NCBI GenBank assembly: GCA_973895155.1
Contig: OZ316899.1
Span: 16,271,974-16,335,973 of the forward strand
Direction of reading: 5' to 3'
Length of the DNA: 64,000 nucleotides
Source of the DNA: Marsupella aquatica
Taxonomy: Eukaryota > Plantae > Marchantiophyta
The position numbers were made by a program, and so were the translations under genes. Positions 19,928 to 42,994 of the stretch are shown here, one piece after another. Positions within the stretch are counted from its first letter, which is position 1, and each line of letters begins with the position of its first letter. The notes under the pieces are model-generated. The model made no database searches. It saw only the letters and a list, made by a program, of their open reading frames with translations, and was not told the DNA's origin.

Positions 19928-20620
19928 TGTCACTTGTCCTGCCCTCCCAGACCCCACCACCGGTGACTTTGGTGTCTACACATGTTTGGATCACATGCTC
20001 TAGAGGACCACTTGTCACACCGCATGCACAGACCAGATACCATTGACCTATAGCTTAACACTCTGACTTCAACACAGAGGATATTTACTTAAAATTTTGA
20101 TGTATGAGCAATTTTGGGTCCAGGGTTTAGGGTCAACAGTACATAACTTATATCCTATTATGCCTGCACTAAGCAAAATATCCTAATTTAAGAGGCTAGC
20201 AAACTCGCATAAAAGTCTCTATTGAAAGACTGCTTTCATGACTGCTTTAACCTGGTGAACATTGCAACGTTCAATGAATTAATGGGCCATGTGATAACCT
20301 GTAAAATGTGATTTATGCATCACTTATTTGTCTCAGCCACTATCATAGCCTATTTAGGATGTATAAATTTCAACCCTTATGACACTGCTTCATACCAATC
20401 CTCTTCGAAGAATGCGCGTTTTACATGTCACGACTATTGTATGTGATTCAAATGCATGAAATGTTGTTGCAGATCTCCTTTGGTGAATCATAGCCACAAT
20501 TAAAATTGAGGTGTTGGTGGAGCAATTGTATTAGGGGATCAGGTTTGTGTGTGGGCTCAACATACCAAAAGTATGTCTGCTCTGCATCCTTGTGTGGCCA
20601 TTCCAATTCATTGCAGTAGC

Positions 20621-20764
20621 AAATGCCTTTGTACCTTAAATGCTAAATATATTTTACTTTCTGTGCAGTCTGCTAAATTGTAGAGTCTATCTAAATGCCT
20701 TTGTACCTTAAATGCTAAATATATATTACTTTCTGTGCAGTCTGCTAAACTGTAGAGTCTATCT
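20621..20764. repeat. 72-bp tandem duplication just upstream of the PHD ORF
   Basis: aaatgcctttgtaccttaaatgctaaatata...tgtgcagtctgctaaa.tgtagagtctatct occurs twice. Confidence 0.9.
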
Positions 20765-20775
20765 CATGCGCAGGC

Positions 20776-21456
20776 ATGGCACGACCTAAAATTCAAGCCA
20801 AAAAGCGTGTGACAGAGGTGAGAAACACAGGTGTACTTGGGGCAGATGCTACTAACTTCTCTGCAAGTCAGATTTTCCAGAAGGCAGCTCATTGTTGTGC
20901 CATTTGTGACGATGGTGGGGGCCTGGTCATTTGTGAGGGCCCTTGCATGAGGCATTTCCACCTCAACCCGGAGTCTGACCTTGCTGCAGAAAACAACTGT
21001 CCAGGGGTGGGCCTCCCGTCAACACACCAGGGAGACTGGATGTGCACTAATTGTTTGGAGAAGCAGGCTAAGTGTGCACAGTGTGGGAAGTTGGGGTCCT
21101 ATGAGGGCTCTGTTGATGCTGCAGCAAATGTTAGGAAATGTCCAGACCGTTTTTGTGTGAGATTTTTCTGTTTTGAGTGTTTGCCTGCTCATGCCACAGC
21201 TTGCCCACTTCATAGGTGCAAGGCATGTGGTGAGCATGATCATGAGTACTGGACTGACATAGTCCACTGTGCTAGGTGTCCCACCATGTGGCACTATCAT
21301 TGCCTGAAAGATCGTCAAGCAGAGGGTTATGCTTGTGATAGAGAAATCTATGATCACTCTGCACATGGTGTTGATCGATGGATATTTTATTGTCATCGCC
21401 ATGCCATTGATCCTACCTCGCGCACTCCTGTGAGAGATCACATATCTTGGCTGTGA
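20776..21456 (+). CDS. Stand-alone EDM2-like atypical PHD-finger cluster protein (226 aa, intact)
   Basis: CAICDDGG..CEGPCMRHFH, C.NC..KQ..C..CGKLGS, CPLH.C..C, C.RCPT.WH..CL and YC.RH.ID....TPVRDHI follow the EDM2 PHD region as I recall it, including the TPVRDH tail. Confidence 0.88.
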   Translation: MARPKIQAKKRVTEVRNTGVLGADATNFSASQIFQKAAHCCAICDDGGGLVICEGPCMRHFHLNPESDLAAENNCPGVGLPSTHQGDWMCTNCLEKQAKCAQCGKLGSYEGSVDAAANVRKCPDRFCVRFFCFECLPAHATACPLHRCKACGEHDHEYWTDIVHCARCPTMWHYHCLKDRQAEGYACDREIYDHSAHGVDRWIFYCHRHAIDPTSRTPVRDHISWL

Positions 21457-22231
21457 AGCTGAACATTGTACATGCACAATGCACCTGATGTGGATGTACT
21501 ATTTTTTGAGATTGCAGAGATTCCAATTTTGAAAAGGAGTTGGGTAGGCAAGTTTATATAGGCAGCACTTATCTTGTGCGCTGGCGTCAGTGGCTGGGTA
21601 CATGCCTATAAAAACTTATCCTTACAAGCCTTCTTGGAAGTATTTAGGCTGAGTGGTCATTTTCATAAACACTTTCATCAGACTGCTAAATTAAAACAGG
21701 ACTTCTAAGTTGTAAGCGTATAAATTATCAGGCATGCGATTAATCAAATTGCCCTATAAGTTTGTCATTGAACGTATCCTCCTTTACAACAAAATATGTA
21801 TGTGCCATGACAAGTTGGTTGCACTTCATTTCACCTTCGATATGGATTTTGTAGTATATATTCAAACAATGTCCTGCATCCGTGCAGGTGCCTAGTACGT
21901 ATTGTTCACATATCCCTTGTACCTATCAAAATCAGACCTGAGCACCAGTGGGCCAGATCAACTCAAAAAGCAAGAATTTTGTTGTCCTTGTATTGTCAGG
22001 TGAACCCATTCTTCCAAAATTCACTGTCATCACGTAGGGTGTGTGTACATGGAGCCTGGGAAACGTAGAAAGTGTGACCACCCAGCAGTGTTTACAGGGG
22101 TCAGAGCCATTTTGGTCCATGGCCAGCATGGGTTGACCAAAGTGCATTGGCCAACTATACAGAAACGATTCTCTGAGCTCCATGGCACTGTAGTTCAGGA
22201 CATCACTCCATAGACTACACATGTTGTTGCA

Positions 22232-22921
22232 GGGACATGGCTATCAGTGATAAAGAAGTGGTCATGGTCCTACATGAATTATGCAATTACTAAGCAAGGC
22301 CTAAAAGTAGTTGAGGCCTCTTGGATCACAGATTCCATAGCACATCAGATTGTACAGGATACTGAGCAATATGAGTTGTGGGAGGATGAAGAAGCTACTG
22401 CATCAGCTTGGGCTGAACAAGAAGTCTGGGAAGCAAAGGCACGGCTTGCTGATGTCCAATATGGACCTGTACTCAACAAAGGACAGAGCTCTAGAAGGCT
22501 GAAGAGTATGTTGGCTGAGGAGACGAAGCAACCAACCCCCATTCTGAAAGGGCTGAGCATGGTATTTGTGGAGGCGGGAATTGGAGAGGTTAAGTGCAAA
22601 GTGTACAAGTCCACGGTGCTTGACCTAGGTGGGACAGTGGAGGAGAATATAACAGAGGACACCACTCATGTCATTACTAAGTCATATCCCAAAGCCTGCC
22701 GCAAGTTTGGGAAGGGAGACATTCGCTTTTATGTCATGTCCCATAATGTGTTTGTGGTTTCATATGCTTGGCTTGTGGAATCAGTAGCAGCTGGGAAGTG
22801 TCAAAACCCAATGGACTATGATCTTTTTGAGGCCTGGCCACGGAAGGGTCAGGATCCTTACAGAGAGGACTATGAGACAACAAGTGAGGAATGGGTCATT
22901 AACGATTCTGAATCAGAGTGA
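22232..22921 (+). CDS. BRCT-domain protein, last exon (one partial and one complete BRCT)
   Basis: KVVEASWITDSI..Y.L, then LKGLSMVF..LGGTV..TTHVI..VVSYAWLVESV..DYDL. An acceptor (ttgcAG) lies at ~22231. Confidence 0.8.
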   Translation, partial: GTWLSVIKKWSWSYMNYAITKQGLKVVEASWITDSIAHQIVQDTEQYELWEDEEATASAWAEQEVWEAKARLADVQYGPVLNKGQSSRRLKSMLAEETKQPTPILKGLSMVFVEAGIGEVKCKVYKSTVLDLGGTVEENITEDTTHVITKSYPKACRKFGKGDIRFYVMSHNVFVVSYAWLVESVAAGKCQNPMDYDLFEAWPRKGQDPYREDYETTSEEWVINDSESE

Positions 22922-23534
22922 GGAGTAGTAGCATCAGTTTGGACACAAGTTTTTTTGTATAAATCAGATCATTGAAATAAATGTGATCTTTGAACTAATG
23001 TACCTTGTTATGGTTGGTGGCAGTTGGGCTTATTTTACTGTTGGCGGATTGTTGTTTCCTGCTGCCTGGGGGTGTCACTGTAAACGTACTGGGTGGGCTC
23101 AAATCTCGGCGGTGAGATATCTGATACCGCTCTCACACCTATGCCTATGACTATACATGATTGGACTCTGATATAGTCATGGGTGTACATGCAAAGGCGG
23201 TACATTTGAGGACAGCTGTGGAGGTGGTGACACCCTCAAACATTGAGGAATTTTGTGTCATTCACTTGACAATAGGTACACTACTCGCAAACCTGTTTTT
23301 TTCTTTTGGGGTGGTTTAGGGTTTGTGAGAATTTATTACACGTTATGTTAACTCTTTTGGCACATACAGTCAGGGATATATGGAACACAAATACCACCAT
23401 TAGGCATCCCTGTTCACTGCTGTCCATGACTGCAGAGCTTCCAGCCTGTTACAATGCACCCTGGTCACCACCCTCCCCAAACCCAGCCCAGGGCACAGGC
23501 ACTGCCTTTGCATCATCCCACAAGGATATCACGC

Positions 23535-25520
23535 CATGATAATAAGCTTTGGCAGCGTGAAAGGTTACGAACCAGACTTTCAGGAGCCAGTAGGATGAGA
23601 TGTCCTTGTGCAATCTGCCAAGGATCCCGTACCAGGGGTCTGAATGAGGTTTGGCGGCATATCGCGGTTCATGGAAGAGATCCACGACATCGAGTTTGGA
23701 ATGATCCTGCAAAGGAAGATTCTTCCGACGAGGAGTGGAGGTTAGAATTTGATGCTGCCAATGCTGCAAGACGGGCAAGTGAGGTTCTGCCTGGTGCATT
23801 TGAAAATGTTGTAGCTGGTCTCTATGGGTTGTCAGCTCTCCAACGGGATGGTGCTCAGGCAGCACCACGTGACGAAGGAATTCATGTGGAAGAGATGGTG
23901 AGAGACATCTTCCAAGACTTGGATGCATTTCATGATGGGCTGGACAACGAAGAGGATACGGCTGCAGATGCAAGTGTGCCCCCTGTCGAAGAGCCTCTTG
24001 ATGAGTTTGAGATAGGGCAAGAAACCCCTGGGCATGATGGGATGTTTGGCTCTCCCCTGCAAATACAGGAAGGCAGGAAGTCTTTGTACCCCGGTAGCAA
24101 ATGTTCTAAACTGGGATTTGTCATCATGTTCCTAAACATTTGCGACAACCACAATGTCCCCAACGTTTTGGTTTCTGAGTTGTTGGCATTCTTGCGAACA
24201 ACTATGCTACCAGATGGTAATATTTTGCCCAAGAACATGTACGAGGCAAAAAGATGCCCTAAGTGTGGGAAGCACCTACTTGTCATGACCCACCTACTTG
24301 TCCATGTTGTGGAAGAGCTACACCAATTTGGGCCTGTGAGTGCTCGTTGGTTGTACCCTTTGGAACGGTACATGAAGCTACTCAAAGGTCACGTGAGAAC
24401 ATATTACAAACCTGAAGCAAGCATGGCTAAAGGTTACATCAAGGATGAGACTCTAGGATTTCTGACCGAATACATAGCACAATATGAGCATGTGAAGACC
24501 AGGGTGTGGAATTCTGATGAGGTGATAGGTGAAGTACTGGAAGGGGCTGCAACCACAAAGAACCTGACCATATCTATGAGAGACTTGGCACATGACTTTG
24601 TATTGCACAACACTGTGGTGATGGAACCCTGGATACAGTGAGTGCATACATGTGCTATAATCCAGTTCATGAGCTTAAATGTTGTGTTCGTGTGGTTTTC
24701 TCCTTCAGCCTGTTCATGTTTACCCAAGCTAATGCTGTGTGGTTGTTCGTTCAGGGAGTATGAGTCATTGAAGGCGGCCCATCCCACTACAGGAACAACT
24801 TTTCCAGGTTTCATGGAGTGGATCAGAGTGGCAATTAGAGAGCATCACGAGACCCACCCAGACATGGATGCAGATGTTTACCTACTGTCTAATGCCCCTA
24901 GCCTAAAAGTGAAGACTTACAAACGGATGAGAGCATATGGGAATCACTTTCGAGTGAAGGATGGTGACAGTGCCTATAGGGTGACGAATGACTGCGGGCT
25001 CATCACTGTATTTGAGCAACAGAGCCACAATCACGACAGGGCCTGGATGGAGATGGGATATGTGGGAGAATTAGTTGACATATGGGCTCTGGACTATGGG
25101 GCGGTGTCCAGTCCTGTGATTCTTATGAAAGGTTCATGGGTGCGGCAGGATTGGCTTGGTAACAGGGCTACCATGAAGAGAGACAACGACGGTTTCTTGC
25201 TAGCCAATTTCAGAGGGAAATTGCCCGAATGGTCTGAGCCATTTGTGTTTGCTAGTCAGGTGGAGCAAGCTTTCTTCCTGGATGTGGAAGACTCCCCAGG
25301 TTGGCGTGTAGTGTGTCATAAACAGGCCAGGCAACGTCGGATGGAAGGATCAAACCTTGAGTTTCATTTACACTCTCATAGTGCCTTTGATCGTCGGCGT
25401 TCAGACCAAGTGCCTGTAGTTCATGATAGCGGGGACTTCATTCCTGTGACAAGGGTAGATGCATTTGCTGAAGGAGGCGAATTCAGAGATGCAGATGCCA
25501 ACAGTGTGCCTGTGCCATGA
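23535..25520 (+). pseudogene. CACTA TnpD/Tnp2 transposase with the catalytic core deleted (exons ~23535-24637 and ~24755-25520)
   Basis: N-terminal CPC..C domain. LPKNMYEAK joins RCPKCGK and then directly MTHLLVH..GPV..RWLYPLERYMKLLK (DUF4218-like). DYG..W..EPFVFASQVEQAF is DUF4216-like. No Transposase_21-type core is present. Confidence 0.88.
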
Positions 25521-25676
25521 GTAATGTGAATTGTTTGCATGGACATTAGTGAGGGGAAGGATGTGTAATAAAGTAATTCTGAAGCAACACAGATGTATGG
25601 ATGGATGCCTGGTGATTGTGGTTGCATTGTGTTATACGGGGTGATCATAGATGACATGTTTTTGTGGTCCAGTAGG

Positions 25677-28600
25677 ATGGAACAGAGTGACACAGAGATG
25701 TGTGAGTATGAAAGGAAAGCTATGGAACAACGAGCATACGTGAAAGCCAAAATCGCAGAACTGGATCTGGAAAAGGATGTGGCTGAATTGTAAGGGAACG
25801 ATTCTCAACTACACCCCTCCGCTGAGTTTGTGTGACATGAATAGTTCAATGTGGCACTGAAATTGTGACTGTATTCTCATATTGGAATGTCGCAGAGCCA
25901 CAGCATTTTCAAAGAAACAAAAGGAGTACGCAAGAAGGGTGACCAGCACTATCTCTGGGCCTATGCGTCGGAGTGACAGGTTGAGCAAGAAGGTCGTACC
26001 TACAATGGCAGAATGTGGAGATGACATTGATGCTGCACAGGTGGGTGCAGACACTAGACAAGAAGATGCAGATGATGAGTATTTTCCAGAGGAAATGGAT
26101 GAGGATGGGGGTTATGAAGATGAATACATTGCAGAGCAGCCCCAAAAGAAACAGGTAAGTAGTTTTCCCAACAAGGTTTTGAGTTGAAAACTCTTGTTTA
26201 GAGGTTTCATATGTTCAGTACTACACATATGTACCTTGCTTAGTTCCTGACATTGTAGTTGGTGATGTGATGCAGCGTCCTGCCAGTTCTGTTTTGCCTT
26301 CGAAGCCTGTGCATGCACCATACCAGCAGGGGGGGCTGACCTCTGATCAAGGTTGGCGAGGTGGTAGTAGTGGTAGATCCCAGGCTGGTGCCCAATACTA
26401 TGGCAGGGGGCAAGCTCTAGGTTATGCCCGTGGTAGAGGCAGAGCAGGTCCAAACCCACAATCTCGTGGGTATGGACGTCCACCTCAACCATGGGGATGT
26501 GAGTATATATCTATATGCCAGTTCTTTGTGAAGGCATGGCACTCCTGAATTTCAGACTGCATATCAATTTTTGACATTGTTTGGGATGTATTGGATTCAG
26601 ACAACATGAAATTCTGTCCACCTGCCATTGCATGCAGATTCTGCCCAACCTGATTGGGCAAATGCTAGTAATGATCAGTTCCAATGTCCACAAGGACAGA
26701 CATGGGTTGAACCAGGTTGGGAGGATGGTGGTGGGTCGTGGAATGAACAAGGTTGGGAAGGTGGTGAAGGTAATTGGCAGGGATATCAAAATTCAGTACC
26801 TACAAACGCTGGAAGAGGGGCAGGTAATGTCTGATCTTGTCAGCAATGGAAGAACTCATTATATCTGGAGTCCATTCACGTGGGGGGGACTCTGCACATG
26901 TATAATGATAGAAAATGTATGTGTGCAGGTTGGACAGTCGAACCATCGACTCAAGTATTCACTAATGCCCCTATGCAGATGCAGCACGGAAGGGGGACAG
27001 GTATGTTGGTGAATGTTCAGTTGTTTTCCTACAGTTTGTACTTAGTTTTCAGTACATATGTTTGCACACACATACCTAGAAAGTGACATCATCCGGCCCC
27101 TGTACTAGGCTGGACAGGTGGTCCAGGGTCGCAACAATTTCAGAGTGCAGTCCCTGCACAGGCATCTACAGGCAGAGCTACAGGTATGTATGTTTGAAGA
27201 ATTTTTCTTGAAGTGAAGCATTGAATGTTGCCGTCATCCATTCTGCTATATGTAGTTCTCAAGCATGAATGGCATTGTATTTTCCCAGGTGGCTTCAGAA
27301 CCCCAGGTAGGGTGAATGAAGGGGTGGCCAATACAACGCCCAGTACTACCGAGAGCAGTGCACGAGGGGAGGTGACAAAGAAAGGGAACGTAAAGTTGAA
27401 TGAGAGACAATGGGTGGATGCTGAGTGTCCTCGCAAGAACCGATGGCATGCTGATTTGAAAGCTGAAGTATTGCGTTGGTTAGATGTGAGTGTTATTAAT
27501 TTTAAAAAACAGCATCCAAAAGATTGGAAGACTATATGTGAAAATGTTGCTGCCAAATGGAATTATGTGGGCAGTGATGATGGCGTGGACATAGGTTGCC
27601 TAGAGAGTACAGCAGGTAAAATCATCAAGCAAGAGAGGTGGAGAATGCATAAGGCTTGGAAGGAAGGTGGGGAGAAGCCAGATATGCCTCCACCAGCCAG
27701 TTGTGATGATAAAGTGTGGGCAAGGTTAGTAGCTTATTTTGTAACAGATGCTTCAAAAAAGAAGAGTTCACAGATGACTGAGGCCAGGTTGAGTGTTCAG
27801 AACCCTAATCTGACAGGAAGGACCGGCACTGCACCGACAGCTAAACGTTTGGTAAGAATGAATGGCCTAGCTATGTAATTTATGCTACACTATGTACTGT
27901 TTTTTAGTGTAAACCCATACATGTAAACTTTGTTTTTTAGTGTACGTTCCCTGAATATTGATTGATAACTTGTGTTTGCCATGCATGTGCAGAAAGCCCA
28001 ATTGGGGCAAAGCCCTTCAAAAGAAGAGTTGAGGGCTGAAATTGTGAACACCCGGGCTCAAGAGGGTGCATCTGAATCCTCCAAGCATGTAAGTTATATG
28101 AGTTCTGATTGGTAATTGAATGACCTGCGTTGAATTTCAGGTGTACATTGTATATAACATTGATTGTGCATATATTGCCCAACATTTCATATGGAGTGAT
28201 TGAACCTATACCCCTGTGTCATGTAGGGAGGTGGATCTTCACTTACAGAGATAAGTGGTCGTTTGAAGGCTGTTGAAACATGTCTTCCAGAGATCAATGA
28301 ACGTTTGAATTCATTGACTGACTTGTTCCATGTGAACTTCAAGACATTAATGGAAGCTGTTGTGTCGGTGAGAGATAAAATTGATTCCAATTCTGCAGGA
28401 GTTCCACCATCACCACTTGAGGTGGCAAAGTCGATGCACTCTTCTGGCATGCCAACGACATGTAGGCTTGAAGGTAAGGCCTTTACAACTGTGTGGGATA
28501 TGATTATTAAATGTATAGTTTGAATTGACATTGTTTGTTGAATGTGTTATTTTCAGTAACATATATTGTGGTTGATGTGTCCATAGAGAATAAGACAGGT

Positions 28601-29383
28601 GCTACAGAGAAGAAGTATGAGAACCTGGCAAATACTCGCTGTAATTTAGAGGCAACAAAGTTGCAGTCTGTACAAGCAACTTGTTTGACAGAGGGCAGTC
28701 AACCATGTTTGGATGAGGATGACATTGGCAAGGGAGTGGATGATATCAATGTTGGGGCAAATGAGGATATCAGCAAGCATGACAATGATACCATTGAGCC
28801 AGATTCATGCTATGTAGATCTTGACTCCATTGCAGAGATAAATGATTTGCAGAATGTATCATTCTCAATGACATGTGTGCCTCTTGTTGAGATACATCCA
28901 ACCAAAGAGTTAGTTGGTATGACACTCCCAGGTGATGAACCTGCTACTGTGACAGTCCTAACAGAGGAACCTACTGAGCCTAGCTTCACTACTGTGAAGA
29001 GAGGAAGCATGCGCACACGAAGCAAGTCTGCTGGTGGGAGCAGAGCCACGTCAAAGGTTTCATACAAACCTCCAAGAACGGTGCTGGCAGAAAGATCTAA
29101 GGCGGAAGTGGGGAAAGCACCTAATGCTGAGGGACAAAGTGGCTTGTTAGCTCTTGATGAGAGTGGAACACGAGTAGGATTTGGCAGAGTGCAGGTTGGT
29201 TCCACAACGTTCCATGGCAAGAGGATTCCCCCAGGTTATTCAGTAGTGTTAGTCACATTACTAGTGAAACCTAAAGCTGTCCTTCCCATTCCAAACACAA
29301 ATGATGATCCTCCTCAAAAGACACTTGGAGATGCTGCAGGTTCTTTGGTATTATGGCCAAGCAAGTTCATAGAGGATCCATAA
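25677..29383 (+). CDS. CACTA TnpA-like multi-exon gene
   Basis: Many short GT-AG-bounded exons. 27289-27851 has the Ptta/En/Spm-like PP..C...VW..LVAYF..KKKSSQM.EAR. The C-terminal G.V..FHGK.IP.GY..V.V..LP.P..TLGDA.GS.VLWP is typical of Tnp1/En/Spm. Confidence 0.75.
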
Positions 29384-29879
29384 CAATGTCATGTCATTAT
29401 TTGTTTGTAGTGTGAGTCATGTTATGTAGATTTTAGATGTCAAGAAGCAGTACAAGAATCATGTCCTCTTGGAGATTCATAGTATCATGCATGTGCTTTC
29501 AGTTATCTCATCCTGCAGTCATCAATTATGAGTTCCTGTTTTGTCTGAATTACATTGATCACATTGTAAACTATTCCATTGGAATTCAAATGATCTTCAT
29601 TTTTTAGCAAGATTGTGATTGTGTTTAATTCTTATGAATGTTTTATGTAGGATCTGCTTATATGATGCTTTGTTTCATGTGGATGTCATTCATGCTATGT
29701 TCATTTCTTGTATTGAATGTGTTATATTTCTAAAGTTAGAACATCAGGTTTCTATGTATTGTAATGTCGAGTGCTCTCTCTCCTTATGAACTGTCCCTCT
29801 GTGTTCATTAGTCATGGTTATAACTTGCATGTGAACCTTATTAGTTATAAACATGAGTATATAGAGTCCCAAATGGTTC

Positions 29880-30230
29880 TGTTGTGTGACGCGGGCCAGG
29901 GTCTCCATTGGTCTCTCCTGTGACACTAAATGGTCACACACTAGTCGTTGTTGAATGCGGGTAAGTCATGCATGTGACTTACGATGTGACTCGCTGAAGT
30001 CATATTGCAGTCACGTCGAAACAAGGCTAGACTCCACAATAAAGTCACAGATCAGTCACAAATGGGTATCAAGCAAGTTGCAAAGCCCAGTATCAATAGT
30101 GACTACCATTTTTTGGTCTCAACTTTTGCAACTCCAAGGGTCACAGTGTGGGTCAAGTCACGTTGAGTCACAATGAAGTCACATGAGCCAAAATGAGTCA
30201 CATATTGCGGTCTCAGTTCACCTCGGATTC
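29880..30230. repeat. CACTA subterminal GTCAC/GTGAC repeats
   Basis: Dense direct and inverted gtcac words next to the TIR, mirrored at 46330-46625. Confidence 0.75.
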
Positions 30231-30238
30231 TTCTAGTG

Positions 30239-33200
30239 TTGCCCCACCTACTACCATACTTCTGTCTCATTTGGACAATCCGACCCAACCAAAAATATTT
30301 CTTACCTGCTGAGATTGCCTCCACCACAGCCTTATTCTTTCCTCCCTTTCTTTTTCCAGATCTAGTACTTGGAGCAGGATTATCATCAGACTCAAATGCA
30401 ATTGCACAATCAGTGCCAACATCAACAAAACATGAGTTAGGACTGGCTTCTTGCACTTTTCTCTTGCCAGTACTATAGTATAGCTCTTGTTTCACCCTTG
30501 TTAGCCTATCTTTTGACAAATGTGGATTGCCTACAGCATGGACAACTGATCCGAACACATGCCGAACTTCGTGACCTAATGTCTCAAGCTCATCTGAGGG
30601 GTCTACATCAAACTGTATATCATCTCTATGTACATCATCTGAATGCATCTCAGGAACGACAATGGGATCTGGTTCTATTAACCATGCATCTATTCTATTC
30701 AAATCATCCTCAAGATCTTCCAATTCATGAAAATCTCCAGTTGGGCGAGGACCTATGTCTGGTGGTTGGTGCTCTACTTGCTCCTCAGAATCATTGCAAA
30801 CAATTGCTTCCTTCAGAACCACCTCTAGTGGCCAGGTCTCACTTTCCACAACCCAAGGACATGTCCACCATCTCTTTCTAGCTGCTGGTAAGGAACTTTG
30901 TGGAGACATCTGCAATTGATGCATAAGATCCTTAGCAGCAACAAAACCTTCTTTAAGGGCTGCAACCACTAATTCATTAGTCTCAATGAGAGAATAGTCA
31001 AGTAGATTTGGTGCTTCCTCCCCTTCCCCTATAGGATGAATCTTCCCCCATACATGATCTTGTTTCTTATGTGAACGACCTATCTTCAAGCCTTCTGGTC
31101 CATATTCTAGGGCAACAAGCCAGTTCAGTCCAACAGCACTATCCAACAGAGAGCCAAAATCATAATTTTGCTCATGGCCACTCATGCCTCCTACCTTGTT
31201 GAAGAAAATCTCACAACAATCCGAACCTAGCAAGTGGAAGGGAACACCTAGATGTGGGAACTTATCTCGAAAGACACAAATTAACAGCACAATGAAATGA
31301 CATGACATGTTAACATCATGAAAAGCCTGAATAAACATCATGTCTTTCTCAGTGTGTGTTGCAAAGTTCCCACCCACTGAATGGTCACCAAACCTCAACC
31401 ACAATCTCCACAAACGTAGAAAGAATGAAACCTTGGATGCTAACACAATACGGGACCTCAAGTCATGAACTAGAGAAAAGAAAATATCTAAGTAATCTGC
31501 ACAAATCTCCAAGTAAAACTGAGTTCCTAAACTTCGTTCATGTCGTACATCTCTCCTCTCATACATATCTTTCAGACATTGCTGCACTCTTCTTGCTGCT
31601 ATTTGTTGTGGACCTGCCCAATTTTGCCAGTCAGTCCTATTCACATCATCCCAAGCCATGCCATGTTCATGAATTGGATAATGATTGTAGACATTAGCTA
31701 CATAAGATAAAGATGCATGTTGATCTCCTAGCACCAGTAAAGAAGACACTCTATCTAAGGGGTTTATCATCTTTTTCCCATTATGAGGTTGGTCTTGGTC
31801 ACCAAAGCCATACAAATCCCCATTTGGTAGAATTGAAACAGAGTATGTCCACCCTTCCCACCCAACTCCGTACCTTGGGTATGATCCATTCTACCCTCTA
31901 TATCTTCCAACATCAACTTTCGGCGATGTGCATCACCATCACTAGCATGTCCAAGCAAAGGGCCTACCATAGCTCTACAATATTCATCCCAAAAAGCCTT
32001 TAATTGGACCCAATGCTCTCGCACCCAAGAAGCTGTGAACTTATTACAAGTTGGAAGTGCACAAACAGCCAATTTAGGTAAGGACTCATGCAGAGGATTC
32101 ACAATCACAACTCGGGCATACATGCACTTGGGGCATTGTTCAAATGTACTTACAATTTTATCATACCCCTCATCACCTTCACCAACTAGAATTTCCAAAC
32201 CATAGGAGCATACATGCTGCTCTGAAAGTCCACAGAAACCAATGAGAGTATCATACTTTGCCTCCCACCTGAAACACAGACATGCAATTTTTCAATATCA
32301 CAGCAATTCCAGCCAAGTGCTACTTGTAAAGTCATTAAAAAAACAATTGGAAAAATGTCCAGTTCCAATTACCTAGGGCGTTCTTTGATCCTTGTTTCAT
32401 CCTCAACAAAGATAACAGGCACATCCCCCTCAATGCCCAATGAGTGCTTTGCAGCAGACAACACTCTAGCAATCTCCTGAAAGGTTTCCTTCCGTAACCC
32501 GGTTTGAAAAGGTGTGAGTTTTGCTCTATCACATTTTAGGGTCACAAGGCTAGGGGCTGTCAAGTTTTGTGCAAAACAATGAGCAACTTGACATCCCCCA
32601 AATTGGAACATAGCCTGAGCAATAGCTCGAGTCCTATTATTGTAACGATTACCTTTTGGCTTCCTACCTAAATTGCAAGCTACATCCTTCAAGAAATCCC
32701 ACAAACCCTCCTTACCACCAAATGCACCATTCCTGTGTCCATTCAAAATACTCCTAAGAAACAATCTCAAATCCTTCCTGTCTGCTGCAACTCCTAACAA
32801 CTCCTCTAGTTTTCGTTTCTTGGTGCTCAAGGCACATACTTTCTGAGCCTGCAAAGCTAACAACCAATGCTCTTTTCGTCGCACAGAGTTCAGCTTGTGC
32901 ACTTGATCTCTTAACTCTGTGTTGGTCAAATAATCCAATCGTATACCACCAGCAGTGGTTTGACTCCCTCTATGGACTACTGCTTCCGCTTCCCTGTGCA
33001 CCCGTCCACAAAAATCATCTTCTAGTGTTATAGAATCACATTCACTACAAGATAGATTTCCAAATCCTCCTCCATTCTGTGATAACCTCAAGCAATCCTT
33101 GTGTCTAAAACAGCCTGCTATACTCACAACACAGTCTCTACTTGGATGGAAAACATCCAAGCAACAACTTGGCTCACAATGCCATGTAATTCCCCCATAC

Positions 33201-34456
33201 TGATCATCCAAAATGCCAGAAATATCATAAGATATACCCTTCCATAACACTCGAGGCACACCTCTCTCTACCCATAATCCCCAACAAAGCAAACTCAGAC
33301 CAAGATCAACAGATTCACACACACCTGAACCTGAACCTGAACCTGAACTACTGCCTGTCTGGGACCCATCATCTTTAAAGAACTTCAAAATCCTACTCTG
33401 ACCAGGATGTAGGTCCCTAGAATCAGTCCTCTTTGGCCTGCCCCTCTTCCCAGACCTCAAGGCAAGCATTTTTGTGTCATGCCTAGTCTCCAATGCATCC
33501 AAGTGATCTCGACTCACTAAGTGTGTCCTCAAATTGGGCTCCAAGGTAAGCTTCTTGGGGCACAAGTCAGTGTGAAGCATTCCACAGACAGTACAACAAA
33601 CCTTAAACAGGAAAGACCTGTTTGCATACTCAGGAGTACTGGGATCAGGAACAATAGAGAATAGTTTGCCATCATCCCCAAGCTCAACATTCAATTGCTG
33701 AACTATCTCAACGCCTACTTTGATGGCGTCTGCATGATCATATTCTGGCTTCTCAGAGATGTCTGCTACCTGAACCAAAGTAGAAGGAATGCCCCTTCTC
33801 CGACAATAGTTATCCTTGTGCTTATTGAAGACCAAGTGTTTGGTCTTAAAATTACTAAAGCAATTGGAGATGGATTTAGGGTTCTGAGAGTTGTGTGCAT
33901 TGCCATAAGTTTCCCTACATTCAAGACACTCCAGATGCCCTCAAACATCTGTTTCCTCATCCTAGGTACTAATTCTCCAATTGTGATCACCATAACTCTT
34001 CTTATGTACCCATTTCTCTAACCTCATCCACTCATCTTTCCATAGCTTGATGGGACATCTCCCATCAATTGACTCAAAAGAAGCCCTTACAGGGGAGGGT
34101 GCTGGTGCTGTTGGCCCTTGTTGTGGTGTCCCAGTATTTGGACCCAATGATGCAAGAGTGCAAGGATGACAGGGTACTGGTGGGATCCTCCCACCATCTC
34201 CAAGTTCTTGTTGTACAACAATAACTCTTCCATCCAGCTCAGACAGATCAATTAATTTCTCATGTACAAGTTTGACTCGACCAGGAAGTCTCTCATCCCA
34301 AAAATCAAAGTCAAAGTCTAGAGTAGAGGCAATACAAGCCCTAAAATCATGCAGGGTGTGTCCTTCTTTGAATGACAAAACACAGATTGGTAAATCAGCC
34401 TTGTCATCCCCAACTTTGCGTATTAATTTAACAGAGTTGAGTTTAGGGGCTGCCAT
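30239..34456 (-). pseudogene. P-element/THAP9-like DDE transposase with N-terminal zinc fingers (main part)
   Basis: ORFs 33962-34456, 32369-33835, 31767-32198 and 30103-31815 are consecutive pieces. Motifs in order: EDETRIK, HASDGD..RRK, QDQPHNGKK, DVNRTDWQN, GSDCCEIFF. C2H2-like CLEC..H and CTVC..H..H motifs lie upstream. Confidence 0.75.
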
Positions 34457-34653
34457 TGCAATACAAATCTAGAACATGCATAGCACCATTGCTTTTGGAG
34501 TCGATAACAAAAAGACCTGCACAAATACATTTGAAATACACACAATGCAAACACATTAGGATCTTCAAGAGATGCAATGACAACATACACATTCTCATGT
34601 AATATACATAATGTCAGCATACATTTAACAATAGAAGTGCTAATAGGCCAAAA

Positions 34654-34831
34654 TGTTATAATACATAGGTTAAGTCTAGACTTGGGTTATCTGGACACCT
34701 AGGATTAAGTTACCTTAACCTTAGGTAACTGCTGTAACTACCTAGACTTTGGCTTGAACCAACCACCATGTATATACTCCATTTGGAACTTGAAGGAAGA
34801 ACACACTTATCATTGTGTAGTTACTCAAACA
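34654..34831 (+). repeat. 5' LTR
   Basis: tgttataata...ctcaaaca; identical by eye to 40186-40363. Confidence 0.96.
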
Positions 34832-34845
34832 CGTTATCAGCACGA
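34832..34845 (+). promoter_or_regulatory. Primer-binding site, half-tRNA-Ile type
   Basis: CGTTATCAGCACGA follows the LTR directly. It is complementary to the tRNA-Ile anticodon arm (UCGUGCU-IAU-AACG, recalled) rather than to a CCA end. Confidence 0.75.
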
Positions 34846-35138
34846 TACGCTAGAGGCAATTTCTTTTCCAACATCAGATCTTGTGCAAGACAACGATGAA
34901 TCAAATGTGGGGCTGTTGAATGATTGAAACAAAGTTTATCCTTCTAAATTTTTTTTGAGAAAGGCTCACTTAAGCAAGTATCTAAGGATATAACCCGAAG
35001 AAGAAATTTGAATGAAATCCAGTGACTCCATTTACAAATTGGGAGAAATCTACAAGCGAATTCAAAATTGAAGCTTCATCAATTATCTGAGGAAGATTAC
35101 ACATAAAGTGATTTGAGGAAATTGCCAACATTGAGAGA

Positions 35139-38100
35139 ATGGCACCTTCGACAAGTACAATCAAGAAATTAAACTTTCAAGCACTAGATATAGATGGCTC
35201 AAATTACTTGTCGTGGTCACTGGACGTAAAGGCACATTTGGCCTCAAAGGAAATTCCCAATACTATTCTTACAAATGCAGGCCACACTTTACAACAAAAG
35301 GCCCAGGCATTGATTCTAATAAGACACCATTTAGCGGATTCTCTCAAGCTCCAATATATGAATGAATACAATCCTCGAATTCTATGGGAGGAACTAAAGA
35401 ACCGTTTCGATCACACCCAGACTATATTTCTCCCCTCTGCACGCCATGATTGGATTAATCTGCGCGTAGAAGACCACAAGTCAATTGCTGAATATAACAG
35501 TGAATTTTTTCGCATAGTATCTCAATTGACTATTTGCGGACACCCAGTAGGAGATGATGAACAGATAGAGAAAACTCTATCTACACTTCACTCCACAAAT
35601 TTAGTACTATCAACGTAGTACCAAAATATGAGGTTTACAAGATATTCAGAGCTAATTGCCCATATGCTTTTAGCAGAGAAGCATCAGCTTCTACTACTAC
35701 AGAATACAAAAGCTCGACCACCTGGCACCCTTCCTCCCCAAACACAGGTGGAAACTCATTACAATGCTCCACAAACAACACATCGAAATCAATCACGAGA
35801 CAGAAGAGACCAAAGAGGATCATATAGAGGCCGAGGCTCCCAGAGGGGCGGCCGTTTTCAATCATTCAGAGGAGGAAGAAATCAACTTTACAGAGGCAGA
35901 GGACGAGATAGGGGCAGATACAACAGCTCCAGAAATTCATGGAAACGGGACAATGGGTATAACCCACCGACAAGGAGAGCCGATGACTTTCGAGATAAGT
36001 CTGAAAACCCCCCTATCTGCAATAGATGTGGCACAAAAGGACATATTAAACGCTTATGTAGAGCACCTACACATCTGGTTGATCTTTATAAGCAAAGCTT
36101 AAACAGAGAAACATATGAATCTCATGGAGCATTTTTAGAAGCCCCTACCATCTTACCAAAAATTCACCTAGTCTCCCAACCAAATGAAAACCTGGATTCA
36201 CTAAATTGTTGCATAGTCGATAGTGCCACGTCGCACACCATTCTACAAGACCCAAAATATTTTAAATTCATAACTCCCTCCCACAGAAGAGTCACCACGA
36301 TAATGGGCCAATATCAACTAGAAGAAGGCCACGGCCCAGCTAAACTCATTCTACCCAATGGCACATACATACACATAAAATCTGCGATTTATGCTCCTAA
36401 AGCCACAAGAAATCTATTGAGCTTCAAAGACATCCGGGATAATAATTTGCACATACTCACCGATATAATTGACTCACCGGAGGTTCTACAAATTGTGGCA
36501 AAAACACCAATCGGTATACAGATAAAAGAGACATTAACTGCACTACCATCAGGGTTTTACACTACGAAAGCATATAGTTTTCATACAGAGCTCAAGAATA
36601 GCACAATTACAGAAATACGGCATAACCGGTTGGGCCACCCTGGCACAACCATGTTTTATAAGATCATAAAAGATTGCCAGGGCATCCCACCTACAGTACA
36701 CCCAAGATCACTCACATCTCCTTGCCTGGCCTGTTCAACAGGAAAGATGGTCACTAGACCAGCACCCTCAACCACAGACAAAGCCATACCGAGATTCCTT
36801 GAGCGACTTCATGCTCATGTCTGTGGCCCAATAGATCCCCCAAGTGGACCCTTCCAATTTTTCTTAGCTCTTATATGTGCCTCATCAAAATGGTCACAAA
36901 TTTCTCTCCTATCTACCCAAAATCTGGTATTTCCAAGGATACTTGCCCACATATTAACATTAAAAGCACAGTTTCCCGACAATCCTATCAAGAAACTTCG
37001 AGTGGATAATGCAGGCGAATTTATGTCACAAACATTTGATGACTTTTGTGTTTCAACAGGAATTGAAGCTCAATACTCAGTTCCACATGTACATTTCCAA
37101 AACAGAATAGCAGAGTCACTCATCAAAAGATTACAGATGATTGCTCGGCCCCTGCTTATGCAAACAAATCTCCCTGCCTCTGCATGGGGCCATGCAGTTC
37201 TCCATGCAGCTACATTACTGAAATACAGACCATCGGCTTTTAATTCAAGTACACCATACAATTTAGCTTTTGGTTCTTCCCCGAACATTTCCCATCTCAG
37301 AACGTTCGGCTGTCAAGTATTGGTCCCAATATTGGGGCCTAAGAGGACAAAAATGGGACCACAGCGCCAACCTGGCATTTATGTGGGTTTTGACTCCACA
37401 GCCATTATCCGCTACTTGGAGCCATCAACAGCGGACGTATTCAAAGCACGTTTCGCTGATTGCCATTTTTATGAAACTATTTTCCCCAAGTTGGAGGTGA
37501 CGAAAACCCATGGACACAAATTACCTAAAGATTTACGTTGGCAAATCCAGACTGGATTTTGGAATGACCCTCGCACACAACAAGCAGATTCAGAAATTCA
37601 ATGCACACTGCACCTTACAAGAATGATGGATCAACTCTCTGATGCTTTCGCAGACGCTGCTAAAGTGACTAGATCCCACATCCCAGCAGCGAACACTCCG
37701 TCCCGAATACAACACCTGGATCTAACGGCAAATCAAACAGAACCTCGAGTCAAACGTGGGAGACCAACTGGAGCAACAGATAAGCAGCCAAGGCAGAGGC
37801 GCTCCAAGGAGAACATACAGCCAGCATCAATCCCACCAATAGCAGAGATACTTTCTGAAACAATGCATCTCGAACATGAAGAAATTGCCATCAATTATCA
37901 ACATATAGGACAAATCTGGGATCGGCAGACCACACCTTTGGATCATACGTTTGTATTCCAAACATCACAAGATATCACTGAAGATTTACCTGATCCCAAA
38001 ACAATCCTGGAGGCTCAAAAACGACACGATTGGACAAAATGGGAATCAGCCATAAACTCCGAATTGGATTCACTAATATCACGTAAAGTATTCAGACAGA

Positions 38101-39738
38101 TTTCCCCGGTTTCACATGAAACCCACTTGACTGGATACAAATGGATTTTTGTGAAGAAGCGAAATGCAAAAGGTGAAATAGTGAGATACAAAGCACGACT
38201 TGTGGCCCGAGGATTTACACAAATCCCAGGAAGGGATTATGACTTGACTTATTCTCCAGTGATGGATATCATCACCTACAGGTACCTCATAGCATTTGCA
38301 ATACACTATAAACTTTCCATGCATCAATTGGATATAGTGATCGCATACCTGTATGGAAAACTTGATAAGAACATACAGATGGAGGCTCCACCTGAGCTGA
38401 TAAACATGCTTAAATACCATAGTGAGGGGGAGAACTTACCGAAAAGCCAAGAAGCTGGCCCTTTTGGCCACACAAATCATAATGTGCTACACAACACATC
38501 ACAAACATATGCATATAAGGCTTCTCCAAAGCCAGTGATAAGATCGAAAGCTTGTACAGCTCAAATCCGCTTTGCAATTCAAGTACTGTGCTCACTGTAT
38601 GGGCTGAAACAGAGCGGACGCACCTGGTATCAACGCTTTCAAGCAGAGATGATAGCCATGGGATTTACAAATGCAGATGTTGCACCATGCATATTCATTA
38701 AACGAGAAGGAAAAGAACTGATCATTATAGCAATATACGTCGATGATCTAAACTTGTTTGGCACTAGCAAGATAATGCTAGAAACAATCAACTTGCTCCA
38801 ACGTATTTTCAAAATGCAAGATCTGGGAAAGACAACATTCTGTCTTGGCTTACAGTTTGAGCACTTACCTCAAGGTATCCTTCTCCACCAATCTACATAC
38901 ACTCGAAAAATGCTCACAACATTCAAAATGATCACAGCAAAGAGTGTAAAATCTCCAATGGACCTGCGTTCACTGGATCGGAACAAAGATATTTTCCAAA
39001 AAAGAGAAGAGAACGAACCCCTATTGGGCTCTGAGAAGCCCTACCTATCTGCGATAGGCGCTCTCATGTTCTTGGCAAGCCAAACACGGCCGGACATCGC
39101 ATTTGCAGTGAACCTGCTAGCACGCCATAGCTCACAGCCCACCATACAACATTGGAACGGGCTTAAACGAATCTTCCGCTACTTGAGTGGAACAATTGAT
39201 CTTGGTTTACTCTACCCATCAGACATTGACATTACACTCTATGGATATGCAGACGCAGGATACTTATCCGACCCTGCAGATGCAAAATCCCATATAGGCT
39301 ACGTATTTCTTAATGGACCTACAGTAATTTCTTGGAAGAGCACCAAGAAATCTCTCACTACAATGTCATCTAATCATTCAGAAATAATTGCATTGTACGA
39401 AGCTAGTCGCGAATGCCTTTGGCTATGCACAGTAATAGACTACATTCTAGAAAACACAGGTATGTCAAAACTTACTTCACCCACTGTGATTTACGAAGAC
39501 AATAGACCATGCGTCGAACAGATAGCCGCAGGATACATCAAAGGTGATAAAACAAAACATATTGCTCCAAAATTTTTCTTTACATATGAACAATAGCATA
39601 AACAGATCGAAGTACAATGGATCCCTAGTCAACAGAACTCTGCCGACATATTCACAAAGGCTTTACCTCCTATCATGCACAATGAACTTACCAAAACTTT
39701 AGGGATGCGCAGCTTTACTTCACTCTTACAGGAATGAT
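35139..39738 (+). pseudogene. Copia gag-pol with two in-frame TAG stops (35616, 39594)
   Basis: Gag LDIDGSNYLSWSLD and CNRCGTKGH..C; protease IVDSATSH; integrase LRVDNAGEF; RT YKARLVARGF, LYGLKQSG, YVDD; RNase H GYADA, ADIFTK. Confidence 0.95.
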
Positions 39739-40185
39739 GAAGAAACCAGTTCAAGAAATCTTCTAATTCAGGGGGAGCATACACACCAAGCAACGGTCGA
39801 GAAAGATGAACAACGCAAAATACCGATCACCCTAGCTCTTACGACGAATACATTTCGACGCTGAAGTTGCATACTCCTGAACGCCGACTCTCGACCAAAG
39901 CACCCTGGCTACTTTTCTCAAGACAAGGAGCATCGAGAGAACGCGCGACCACGTGCGAATGAACAATATTTTACATAACTCTAGTTAACCTAGTAATACC
40001 AAAAGTAATCATAAAAGCTCTCATTATGTTTACACTACACTCCTATATTCAAACTCTTTTTTGGTCGGTAACACTCTTTCTCCCAGAAGAAAGCAGGGGA
40101 GTTTTAATGAGGTTACACCAATTATAGATCACCCAACATAGACTTAAAGTTATTGCAACACTTCTACCCAAATGTTGCAAGGGAG

Positions 40186-40363
40186 TGTTATAATACATAG
40201 GTTAAGTCTAGACTTGGGTTATCTGGACACCTAGGATTAAGTTACCTTAACCTTAGGTAACTGCTGTAACTACCTAGACTTTGGCTTGAACCAACCACCA
40301 TGTATATACTCCATTTGGAACTTGAAGGAAGAACACACTTATCATTGTGTAGTTACTCAAACA
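40186..40363 (+). repeat. 3' LTR
   Basis: Copy of 34654-34831, preceded by the purine tract aagggag. Confidence 0.96.
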
Positions 40364-40666
40364 CAAAACACTTTATAATGCAATCCGTCATACATGCAAA
40401 TGTATTCAGTGAAAATCATGATATACCATTAAAGTTGGATAAAATATCTTTGGACAAAATATCCTTTTCGCTTGCTTTTCTAACAATTCTCGAGGTTTAG
40501 TGCTTCTGCTCATCAAAATGCAGCACTATTAGTGACCTTAATTATGACAAAATGTCAACACTAATAAAATTGGGTACTACCACCCATGATGCAGCTTAAG
40601 TATTTGCCTTGCTCATACCCCACTGAGACGTTGAAACCTAAGTAATAGGTTTGTTCATTATTCAGA

Positions 40667-41314
40667 TCACTGGAGCCATGAAATGTGGTCCCTGATTGGA
40701 GTCTTGAGGTGTGGATCAATAGGATAACCGGGGCAATAAAACATCTGTCGTTGTTGTCCATGTGCTTCATGGTCCCAGATGATCCCTTTGCTTTTGATCA
40801 TCTGGAGACAATCTGTATGCCAGGCATTTGGACATCATAGACATTGTACCATGTTCTTGACCATCTGACCCTCAAGACTCTGATAACATGTCACACATGT
40901 ATGTAGTGGGCAGGACTTTGCATCAGCTACCAAACACCCAAAGCAATAATATCGTACACAAAAATGATCAGAGCATTTTCGCACAATTGTAGGTGACGGT
41001 CCCACAGTGCGGCACCCATAACACATGGCCTGGTCCTGGTTACAATTTGGGCAAAACCCTGGCTTCCCTCCATGATGGAGGGGAAGGACCACACTGGGGC
41101 AAGAGTCATTAGGGGCTTCATCTCCAACCACATAATGAAATTGCCCATCACAAATTACCAACTTCCCACCATGCTCACAAATTGCACAAACATGAGGGCT
41201 AGTTTGTAGAATCTCTTGCTCAAAGAACAACGGAATACGCAATACCTCTTCCAAAGAGGCTCCTCTGTCAGAGGACTGTGTTGCTTTCTTTATGTTTGAA
41301 GTCCTTGTCGGCAT
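40667..41314 (-). pseudogene. Second EDM2-like PHD-cluster gene (cargo of element B), one stop and one frameshift
   Basis: VCAICEHGG..CPNC..VRKCSDHFCVRYYCFGCL..CPLHTC..QCL*CPNAWHTDCL, then after a frameshift FYCPGYPIDPHLKTPIRDHISWLQ*. Confidence 0.88.
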
Positions 41315-41603
41315 GGTTCAACTGCAATCATCACAAAGCACATCACATATGAGGGGGACATGTATGATAGTGAGCAATCCATAGACAAAGATAAGGTTAA
41401 TCATAGCACCTGCTCCAATGATCTGCAAACCTCCCTCCCAGATGATTGAAGTCAACTACACAGTGCAACCTGAACACCCACCAACCAAGACATACATAAA
41501 TACAATGCCAACTTGCAAAACTTTGCCACATATATAATGGGAATGAAAAATATTCTCATATATCATGGATGGTACAATTGCAGCCTTGCAAACAAAGGCC
41601 TAG

Positions 41604-42869: not shown

Positions 42870-42994
42870 TGGCTCCAAACCTTATCTACGAGGGCATGGT
42901 GAGCTCCGGAGGACAAAATACTCAAAGAGCTTATTGCCATTCACGGAGCTCAGAACAGGAATTTTATAGCTGAAAAGCTAAACGGGCAGATCAG
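42870..42994 (+). pseudogene. Captured fragment of R2R3-MYB exon 1
   Basis: RGH(fs)APEDKILKELIAIHGAQNRNFIAEKLNG(fs)SG followed by GT; resembles RGHWRPAED.KLKELV..YGPQNWN.IAEKL.GRSG. Confidence 0.7.

What the first reader, a model, noticed from the sequence alone, without database searches (positions are those of the whole stretch)
20776..41314. Two unrelated DNA transposons each carry a stand-alone EDM2-type PHD reader gene
Seen: CACTA C has an intact, intronless 226-aa ORF (20776-21456), and P-like B has a diverged homolog (41314-40667). Both share VRKC.D.FCVR..CF.CL...A..CPLH and end TP.RDHISWL. Known: EDM2 PHD fingers read H3K9me2-containing marks and, with ASI1/IBM2 and AIPP1, allow full-length transcription through introns that contain heterochromatic TEs. 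Inferred: this is a TE-specific mini-EDM2 family exchanged between superfamilies and kept as an anti-silencing factor, decoy or targeting factor. B itself sits in an intron.
Basis: partly seen in the sequence, partly recalled or inferred. Interest (0 to 1): 0.9.

Follow-up and report, generated by a model that had tools for sequence, protein, structure and literature searches.

The report
Transposon-borne EDM2-type PHD reader genes
Two different cut-and-paste transposons in this plant genome each hold a small gene copied from the histone-reading part of the host factor EDM2; one copy is intact and one is dead, so a chromatin reader seems to have become transposon equipment that may move between transposon types.

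Summary
Both ORFs are real homologs (about 40% identity, tblastn E 2.7e-43). The copy at 20776-21456 is an intact 226-aa gene inside a CACTA element that I delimited at 14905-30238 (CACTAGAAGAA ends, TTG duplication), upstream of its BRCT and transposase genes. The copy at 41314-40667 is a pseudogene. It has an in-frame TGA and has lost conserved positions, including a cysteine and a histidine of the zinc-finger pattern. It lies inside a second element, 13991-44538, with 14/15 matching ends and a perfect 8-bp duplication, about 0.5 kb upstream of that element's transposase ORFs.

The family matches the whole PHD module of plant EDM2 (Arabidopsis residues 225-432, E 1e-27), far better than it matches NSD. 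All stand-alone copies form one clade (100/100) apart from host EDM2 of green algae to angiosperms. Close copies give dN/dS of 0.28-0.36.

The donor lineage is unresolved. No RNA data were available and function is untested. "P-like" rests on the 8-bp duplication and language-model look-alikes only. Exchange between superfamilies rests on one dead copy plus one intact relative of unknown context.

This scan has already found the CACTA-borne gene many times in this genome. The copy in a non-CACTA element is the new part.

The parts
14905..30238 (+). CACTA element C, nested inside element B. This copy is decayed.
   Evidence: Ends CACTAGAAGAA / TTCTTCTAGTG with a TTG/TTG target duplication. Transposase ORFs hit Transpos_assoc, DUF4218, DUF4216 and Transposase_24. 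Reads show a very high-copy family.
20776..21456 (+). PHD-C: intact stand-alone 226-aa triple-PHD gene of EDM2 type
   Evidence: All zinc-ligand columns are conserved. dN/dS to L001 and L004 is 0.28-0.36. The AlphaFold model has pLDDT 86.
20621..20775 (+). 72-bp tandem duplication and a splice-acceptor-like tract ending CGCAG, 2 nt before the ATG
   Evidence: A YAG lies 2-9 nt upstream of the start codon in 6 of 7 homologs, which suggests a 5'-UTR intron (inferred).
19556..19927 (+). MVRTR... Cys-rich ORF upstream of PHD-C, a cassette neighbour that looks frame-disturbed here
   Evidence: The bins at 19600-19993 have the highest summed contig depth in two of the four runs laid, X1 and X2.
22051..22921 (+). 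Tandem-BRCT gene downstream of PHD-C, with an in-frame TAG at 22211-22213
   Evidence: BRCT_2/BRCT hits. The frame continues upstream through one stop. The same PHD-then-BRCT order is seen in L002.
23454..27878 (+). CACTA transposase region: ORFs 23454-24641 and 24642-25520 in one frame separated by a stop, plus the Transposase_24 ORF 27225-27878
   Evidence: It is 54% identical to the transposase that follows the PHD gene in L006.
13991..44538 (-). Element B (P-like), about 9.5 kb of its own sequence plus nested CACTA C and a Copia
   Evidence: Ends match 14/15 and the 8-bp duplication TCCAATCT is perfect at 13983-13990 and 44539-44546. The 3' 150 bp of MITE 4164-4489 aligns to 44393-44538 with score 83 against a null maximum of 26.
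40667..41314 (-). PHD-B: pseudogene of a diverged subfamily of the same PHD gene
   Evidence: Defects are the TGA at 40835-40837, the 4-codon deletion, W88G and H209Y.
41604..42038 (-). 144-aa Cys-rich ORF 289 bp upstream of PHD-B, possibly a decayed ING/Yng1-like PHD finger
   Evidence: The only PDB match is the Yng1 PHD at E 8.7, sharing an FEWFH..C motif. There is no Pfam hit. This is weak.
30239..34456 (-). Element B transposase ORFs (34456-33962, 33835-32369, 31815-30239), continued at 14904-14650 beyond the CACTA C insertion
   Evidence: ESM look-alike clusters carry TNP-like_GBD, RNaseH_C and THAP9_C. There is no Pfam or PDB hit.
34654..40363 (+). Young Copia retrotransposon inserted between PHD-B and B's transposase
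   Evidence: 179-bp LTRs are 100% identical. RVT_2 and gag-pre-integrase hits. TG..CA ends with a CAAAA duplication.
4164..4489 (.). MITE of the B family
   Evidence: CTCGGGGGGGGGTCAC ends and an 8-bp duplication AAATCACA. It aligns to both ends of B.

Best explanation
The window holds two members of a transposon-specific gene family. Its product of 213-245 aa consists only of the composite triple-PHD module of the plant factor EDM2, from the first finger to the TP.RDHI.W tail.

The family arose once from an EDM2-like gene. It has long travelled as an accessory gene placed just upstream of the transposase in a CACTA lineage of a bryophyte-type land plant, and purifying selection has kept it.

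PHD-C is an intact member inside an otherwise decaying CACTA copy. PHD-B is a dead member of a distant subfamily. It sits in the same position and orientation relative to the transposase, but inside a different, P-like element with an 8-bp target duplication. The gene, or a block containing it, has therefore most likely passed from a CACTA element into that element.

Inferred mechanism: the protein binds histone H3 tails as the EDM2 module does. Because it lacks every other EDM2 domain, it would serve the transposon either as a chromatin tether for transposon proteins or as a competitor of host readers on marked transposon chromatin.
For: Shown:
- Homology of the two copies.
- Both copies lie inside delimited elements with target duplications.
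- The PHD gene is the only thing the two elements share.
- The profile search returns EDM2 proteins from Marchantia, Riccia, Diphasiastrum, Arabidopsis and others at E 1e-25 to 1e-33.
- Pairwise alignment covers Arabidopsis EDM2 residues 225-432 (E 1e-27) and Marchantia 598-811 (E 2e-30), including the C-terminal tail.
- EDM2 carries the same three Pfam PHD models.
- Stand-alone copies form one clade, 100/100, against 34 host sequences and against 127 host sequences.
- dN/dS is 0.28-0.36. The ORF is 86.9% identical without gaps, against 61-78% identity with gaps in the flanks.
- The MARPK start and DHISW[LI] end are conserved, with different stop codons.
- 35 invariant columns, mostly Cys and His, persist across 10 proteins down to 39% identity.
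- The PHD gene precedes a CACTA transposase again in L006, where both genes are about 50% diverged.
- P0188 is an intact 213-aa relative of PHD-B.
- The model is confident and resembles H3-tail-binding multi-PHD modules.

From the literature: EDM2 binds H3K9me2 through its PHD module within the ASI1-AIPP1-EDM2 complex (PMC9910501).
Against: - No RNA run holds the region, so expression is unknown.
- PHD-B is a pseudogene. Its element is old, with two nested insertions, so selection inside the P-like family is not shown.
- No second copy of the B family could be retrieved.
- Every relative whose neighbours could be read lies next to CACTA-cassette genes (L006, L002).
- The BRCT and transposase genes of element C carry in-frame stops, so this C copy is probably not autonomous.
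- Histone binding is inferred from homology only.
- The AU test does not reject a liverwort EDM2 donor (p 0.26), so the age of the capture is open.
Confidence: 0.62

Rival explanations
1. PHD-B is not cargo of the P-like family. It is a relic of an old CACTA fragment, or a one-off captured piece, that landed inside this single copy of B. On this reading the two-superfamily pattern is an accident of nesting.
For: All earlier notes of this scan place the gene in CACTA elements. In the tree, PHD-B and P0188 nest among copies that include the CACTA-linked P0006. B is riddled with insertions (CACTA C and a Copia). PHD-B is dead. No other B copy was recovered.
Against: No CACTA end and no BRCT or CACTA-transposase remnant lies near PHD-B. 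PHD-B has the same strand as B's transposase and sits about 0.5 kb upstream of it once the Copia is removed. A distinct Cys-rich ORF precedes it, and the CACTA copies compared lack that ORF. On the P0188 contig a gene ends 238 bp upstream of the PHD gene, similar to the 289 bp seen here. An unchecked first-reader note (s1-762831) reports the same PHD-plus-ING-like block in another P-like element 737 kb away.
Confidence: 0.28
2. The ORFs are neutral transduplicated fragments of the host EDM2 gene, of the Pack-TE type, with no function for the transposon.
For: Plant DNA transposons often capture host gene fragments (general knowledge). One of the two copies here is broken.
Against: All stand-alone copies fall in one clade, well separated from all host EDM2. 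dN/dS is 0.28-0.36. Start, stop and zinc ligands are conserved down to 36% identity. The gene has diverged together with the neighbouring transposase.
Confidence: 0.05
3. The small PHD proteins are host genes, short EDM2 paralogs, that happen to lie inside transposons in this window.
For: Bryophytes do have shorter EDM2-like paralogs of 466-768 aa with the module at the C-terminus (Sphagnum, Riccia, Calypogeia).
Against: Those paralogs group with host EDM2, not with the stand-alone clade. The region is present in thousands of short contigs per run. Both copies lie within transposon ends, and the linkage to a CACTA transposase recurs.
Confidence: 0.04

Closest known systems
Arabidopsis EDM2 (ENHANCED DOWNY MILDEW 2) and its plant orthologs
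   Same: The composite PHD module is colinear from the first finger to the TP.RDHI.[WF] tail, at 30-33% identity (E 1e-27 to 2e-30). Both carry the same three Pfam models: PHD-1st_NSD, PHD_NSD and PHDvar_NSD.
   Different: The transposon protein is the module alone, 226 aa against about 1300 aa. It has no N-terminal RFD-like domain and no C-terminal part. It lacks the roughly 20-residue insert in the second finger. It forms a separate clade and is transposon-borne and high-copy.
NSD1/2/3 PHD1-PHD3 array (animal H3K36 methyltransferases)
   Same: It shares the triple-PHD arrangement. The family profile hits NSD2 residues 647-801 at E 1.4e-10.
   Different: The match is much weaker than to EDM2 and stops before the C-terminal extension. 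There is no PWWP or SET domain.
VANC anti-silencing proteins of VANDAL (Mutator) transposons in Arabidopsis (PMC5735166, PMC10398659)
   Same: Both are accessory genes encoded beside the transposase of a plant DNA transposon. VANC acts on the epigenetic state of its own family.
   Different: There is no sequence relation. VANC binds DNA motifs of its own element, whereas this protein is a histone-reader module of host origin. Its function is untested.
Chromodomain or PHD tails on LTR-retrotransposon integrases (chromoviruses)
   Same: Both are chromatin-reader domains of host type carried by a transposable element.
   Different: Here it is a separate gene in DNA transposons.

Membership tests
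EDM2 family | Composite PHD module: three NSD-type fingers plus the YC..H.I....TP.RDHI extension | tested here: met
EDM2 family | N-terminal DNMT1-RFD-like region and the long C-terminal part (full length about 1200-1600 aa) | tested here: not met
   The protein is 226 aa and begins about 40 residues before the first finger. Arabidopsis EDM2 shows DNMT1-RFD at residues 19-136 and the transposon protein has none.
EDM2 family | Groups with host EDM2 orthologs in a tree | tested here: not met
   It forms a separate clade at 100/100. An origin from liverwort EDM2 is not rejected (AU p 0.26).
EDM2 family | Binds H3K9me2-containing H3 tails and works with ASI1/IBM2 and AIPP1 | not testable with these tools
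   Known from the literature only (PMC9910501).
CACTA (En/Spm) superfamily, element C | CACTA... terminal inverted repeats and a 3-bp target duplication | tested here: met
   CACTAGAAGAA at both ends, with TTG/TTG.
CACTA (En/Spm) superfamily, element C | CACTA-type transposase domains | tested here: met
   Hits to the four CACTA-associated Pfam models: DUF4218 1.1e-17 (above its curated cut-off), Transpos_assoc, DUF4216 and Transposase_24 (1e-4 to 5e-6, below cut-off).
P-element superfamily, element B | 8-bp target duplication and short terminal inverted repeats | tested here: met
   TCCAATCT on both sides and 14/15 matching ends. The related MITE also has an 8-bp duplication. hAT elements also make 8-bp duplications.
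P-element superfamily, element B | P/THAP9-type transposase (THAP, GBD, RNase H parts) | tested here: inconclusive
   There is no Pfam or PDB sequence hit. ESM look-alike clusters carry TNP-like_GBD, RNaseH_C and THAP9_C at score 0.92, which is a lead only.

The most novel reading that the evidence does not exclude
A histone-reader module taken from the host's own anti-silencing factor EDM2 has become a free-standing, selected accessory gene of DNA transposons. It has also moved horizontally between transposon superfamilies, from CACTA to a P-like family. If so, it is a portable piece of equipment for dealing with chromatin (anti-silencing, decoy or targeting) and not a passive captured fragment.
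Probability: 0.25. Interest if true: 0.8.

Novelty: new variant of a known kind. Interest (0 to 1): 0.6.

Why it matters
Few transposon-encoded proteins that act on host chromatin are known in plants; VANC is the main example. A selected, stand-alone copy of the EDM2 reader module carried by very abundant transposons would be a second and mechanistically different case. The transposon would be using the host's own reader of marked transposon chromatin. If the gene is also kept in an unrelated transposon family, that argues it works independently of the transposase type.

The 226-aa protein is small, folds confidently in prediction, and can be tested directly with histone peptide arrays and by expression in a liverwort model.

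Tried and rejected
- I first placed B's right end at 42501 from a 15-nt match to the MITE end. I rejected it because there was no matching duplication and the match was at chance level. The true end at 44538 came from aligning the MITE end.
- I first read the 1.2-kb inverted repeat 29025-30239 / 47517-46302 as B's ends. It is the 3' end of CACTA C plus the end of another, inverted CACTA.
- Attempts to find more copies of the B family failed.
  - B's 164-aa N-terminal ORF gave no homolog.
  - The metagenome scan gave three short contigs without informative flanks.
- PHD-B was read through its stop only in local scripts, with X at the stop.
- The reads tools gave only contig runs of unknown kind with coded organisms. 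No spliced joint was reliable, since all sides were 21-30 nt.
- Neither a Pfam scan nor a PDB sequence search of B's ORFs gave a credible hit.
- The Foldseek top hits have low TM scores (0.2-0.28), so only the general multi-PHD reader fold can be claimed.
- Papers on the EDM2 PHD binding assays (PMC4203584, PMC3890799) are not held. Their content is cited only through PMC9910501.
- The organism was not identified.
Full report
**Observation**

The + strand ORF at 20776-21456 is intact and encodes 226 aa. A second homolog lies on the - strand at 41314-40667. BLASTP on its first 159 aa gives E 3e-28. tblastn over the full length gives 40% identity and E 2.7e-43. These are the only two copies in the window.

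Copy B, however, is a pseudogene. Its frame has a TGA at 40835-40837, where all relatives have Arg, consistent with a CGA-to-TGA change. It also has a 4-codon deletion that removes the invariant Cys57 and Arg59. Trp88 and His209, invariant elsewhere in the family, are changed to Gly and Tyr.

**The two elements**

Element C is a CACTA transposon at 14905-30238. It has CACTAGAAGAA at both ends and a TTG/TTG target duplication. Along the + strand it carries:
- an MVRTR... Cys-rich ORF
- PHD-C
- a twin-BRCT gene with one in-frame TAG
- transposase ORFs that hit Transpos_assoc, DUF4218, DUF4216 and Transposase_24, also with one in-frame stop

C is inserted into the coding region of a second element, B. 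B's - strand ORF runs up to the C insertion at 30239 and continues at 14904.

I first misplaced B's right end at 42501. Aligning the related MITE at 4164-4489 to the region put the true end at 44538 (score 83 against a null maximum of 26). B is therefore 13991-44538, with ends CTCGGGGGTCTCACT / CTTGGGGGTCTCACT and a perfect 8-bp duplication TCCAATCT.

B also holds a young Copia at 34654-40363, with 100% identical LTRs. With the Copia removed, PHD-B lies about 0.5 kb upstream of B's transposase ORFs, on the same strand.

tblastx finds nothing in common between C and B except the PHD gene. B's ORFs hit no Pfam model and no PDB sequence. Language-model look-alikes are clusters carrying P/THAP9-type transposase families. 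'P-like' is therefore a reasonable but weakly supported label. hAT elements also make 8-bp duplications.

**What the gene is**

Pfam gives sub-threshold hits to the three NSD-type PHD models, in order. A profile of six family members, searched against 1.84 billion proteins, gives 561 hits. The long ones are plant EDM2 proteins. Arabidopsis EDM2 is in the cluster of P0047, and Marchantia, Riccia, Diphasiastrum, Mangifera and others also appear, at E 1e-25 to 1e-33 over profile positions 33-215.

Pairwise, PHD-C aligns to Arabidopsis EDM2 residues 225-432 (30% identity, E 1e-27). It aligns to the Marchantia protein at residues 598-811 (33% identity, E 2e-30). Both alignments run to the shared TP.RDHI.W tail. 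EDM2 itself carries the same three Pfam models.

NSD2 matches far less well (E 1.4e-10 in the much smaller PDB set), and only up to the third finger. The module is therefore EDM2-type.

The protein is not an EDM2 ortholog. It lacks the RFD-like N-terminus and the whole C-terminal part.

**One transposon-specific clade under selection**

Relatives of 213-245 aa are known only from Logan assemblies and JGI metagenomes.

A quick tree of 138 module sequences and a careful tree of 45 both show all stand-alone proteins as one clade (SH-aLRT 100; then 100/100). They are separated from a host clade whose branching follows plant phylogeny from chlorophytes to angiosperms.

The AU test does not reject a tree joining the transposon clade to liverwort EDM2 (p 0.26). 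A single origin is well supported, but the donor and the date are open.

Several lines point to purifying selection:
- Among the three close copies, dN/dS is 0.28-0.36.
- Against L001 the ORF is 86.9% identical without gaps, while its flanks are 61-78% identical with gaps.
- The MARPK start and the DHISW[LI] end are conserved, with differing stop codons.
- Thirty-five columns, mostly Cys and His, are invariant across ten proteins.

In L006 a copy about 43% identical at the protein level (up to about 50% in tblastx segments) sits 422 bp upstream of a CACTA transposase that is 54% identical to C's. In L002 the gene is followed by the BRCT gene. The link between the PHD gene and CACTA elements is therefore old.

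Reads from four public runs show thousands of short contigs over the region, which indicates a very high-copy family. No RNA run was on record.

**The copy in B**

PHD-B groups with P0188 (100/95). P0188 is an intact 213-aa protein from another sample. That pair nests among copies that include the CACTA-linked P0006.

The most economical reading is a transfer from a CACTA element into the P-like element. Whether the P-like family keeps the gene could not be tested.

Evidence for real cargo:
- The gene has the same position and orientation relative to B's transposase as it does in CACTA elements.
- There are no CACTA remnants around it.
- A Cys-rich ORF lies 289 bp upstream, with a weak ING/Yng1-like FEWFH..C motif. 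The CACTA copies compared lack this ORF.
- On the P0188 contig a gene ends 238 bp upstream of the PHD gene.
- An unchecked first-reader note (s1-762831) reports the same block in another P-like element.

Evidence against: there is a single dead copy, in a heavily nested old element.

**Mechanism (inferred)**

The AlphaFold model is confident (pLDDT 86, pTM 0.80). It resembles H3-tail-binding multi-PHD modules (PZP domains, NSD tandem PHDs), though at low TM scores. The first finger resembles AIRE-type fingers in the profile search.

EDM2's module is reported to bind H3K9me2 within the ASI1-AIPP1-EDM2 complex (PMC9910501). A module-only protein encoded beside the transposase would most plausibly do one of two things. 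It could tether transposon proteins to marked chromatin, or it could compete with host readers there. Neither idea is tested.

**Prior knowledge**

Full-text searches found no paper describing a transposon-borne EDM2-type PHD gene. The nearest functional analogue is VANC of VANDAL elements.

Within this scan, the CACTA-borne gene has been reported and followed up many times in this same genome. The new element here is its presence in a non-CACTA transposon.

**The intron claim**

Donor-like and acceptor-like sites flank B, but the reading frames do not join in phase and the flanking ORF has no known family. The claim is not established.

**Handling of sequences**

PHD-B was searched as its N-terminal piece by reference, and was read through its stop only with X, in local scripts.

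Noticed in passing
window 41604-42038 (-): A 144-aa Cys-rich ORF lies 289 bp upstream of PHD-B and has an FEWFH..C motif like ING/Yng1 PHD fingers. The only match is Yng1 at E 8.7, and the second half of the finger looks decayed. It may form a two-reader block with PHD-B.
   Followed up: partly
window 46302-47517: This is an inverted copy, 86% identical over 1.2 kb, of the 3' terminal region of CACTA C (29025-30239). It is therefore the end of another CACTA element that extends to the right.
   Followed up: partly
window 20764-20775 and the same position in L001, L003, L004, L005 and PHD-B: A pyrimidine-rich tract ending in YAG lies 2-9 nt upstream of the start codon in 6 of 7 homologs. This suggests a 5'-UTR intron and a first exon further upstream, possibly shared with other genes of the element.
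   Followed up: partly
window 22051-22921 (+); L002 1322-1891: The twin-BRCT gene follows the PHD gene in C and in L002 but is absent between the PHD gene and the transposase in L006. The window copy has an in-frame TAG at 22211-22213.
   Followed up: partly
window 34654-40363: A Copia element with 100% identical 179-bp LTRs and an intact 1322-aa polyprotein ORF (35628-39596). It is a very recent insertion.
   Followed up: partly
window 13950-13990 and 44547-44605: A donor-like CAG|GTAAGT lies 35 bp left of B and an acceptor-like TTTTCAG|G about 60 bp to its right. The 362-aa ORF at 44580-45668 has no family hit, so whether this is a host intron is unclear.
   Followed up: partly
window 53146-55486 and 59210-59958: Two tandem arrays: units of about 690 bp at 85-87% identity, and units of about 68 bp at 88-93% identity. 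The second lies inside ORFs at 59077-60018.
   Followed up: no
window 43456-43992: Degenerate tandem repeats in the 5' subterminal part of element B, as is common near the ends of DNA transposons.
   Followed up: no
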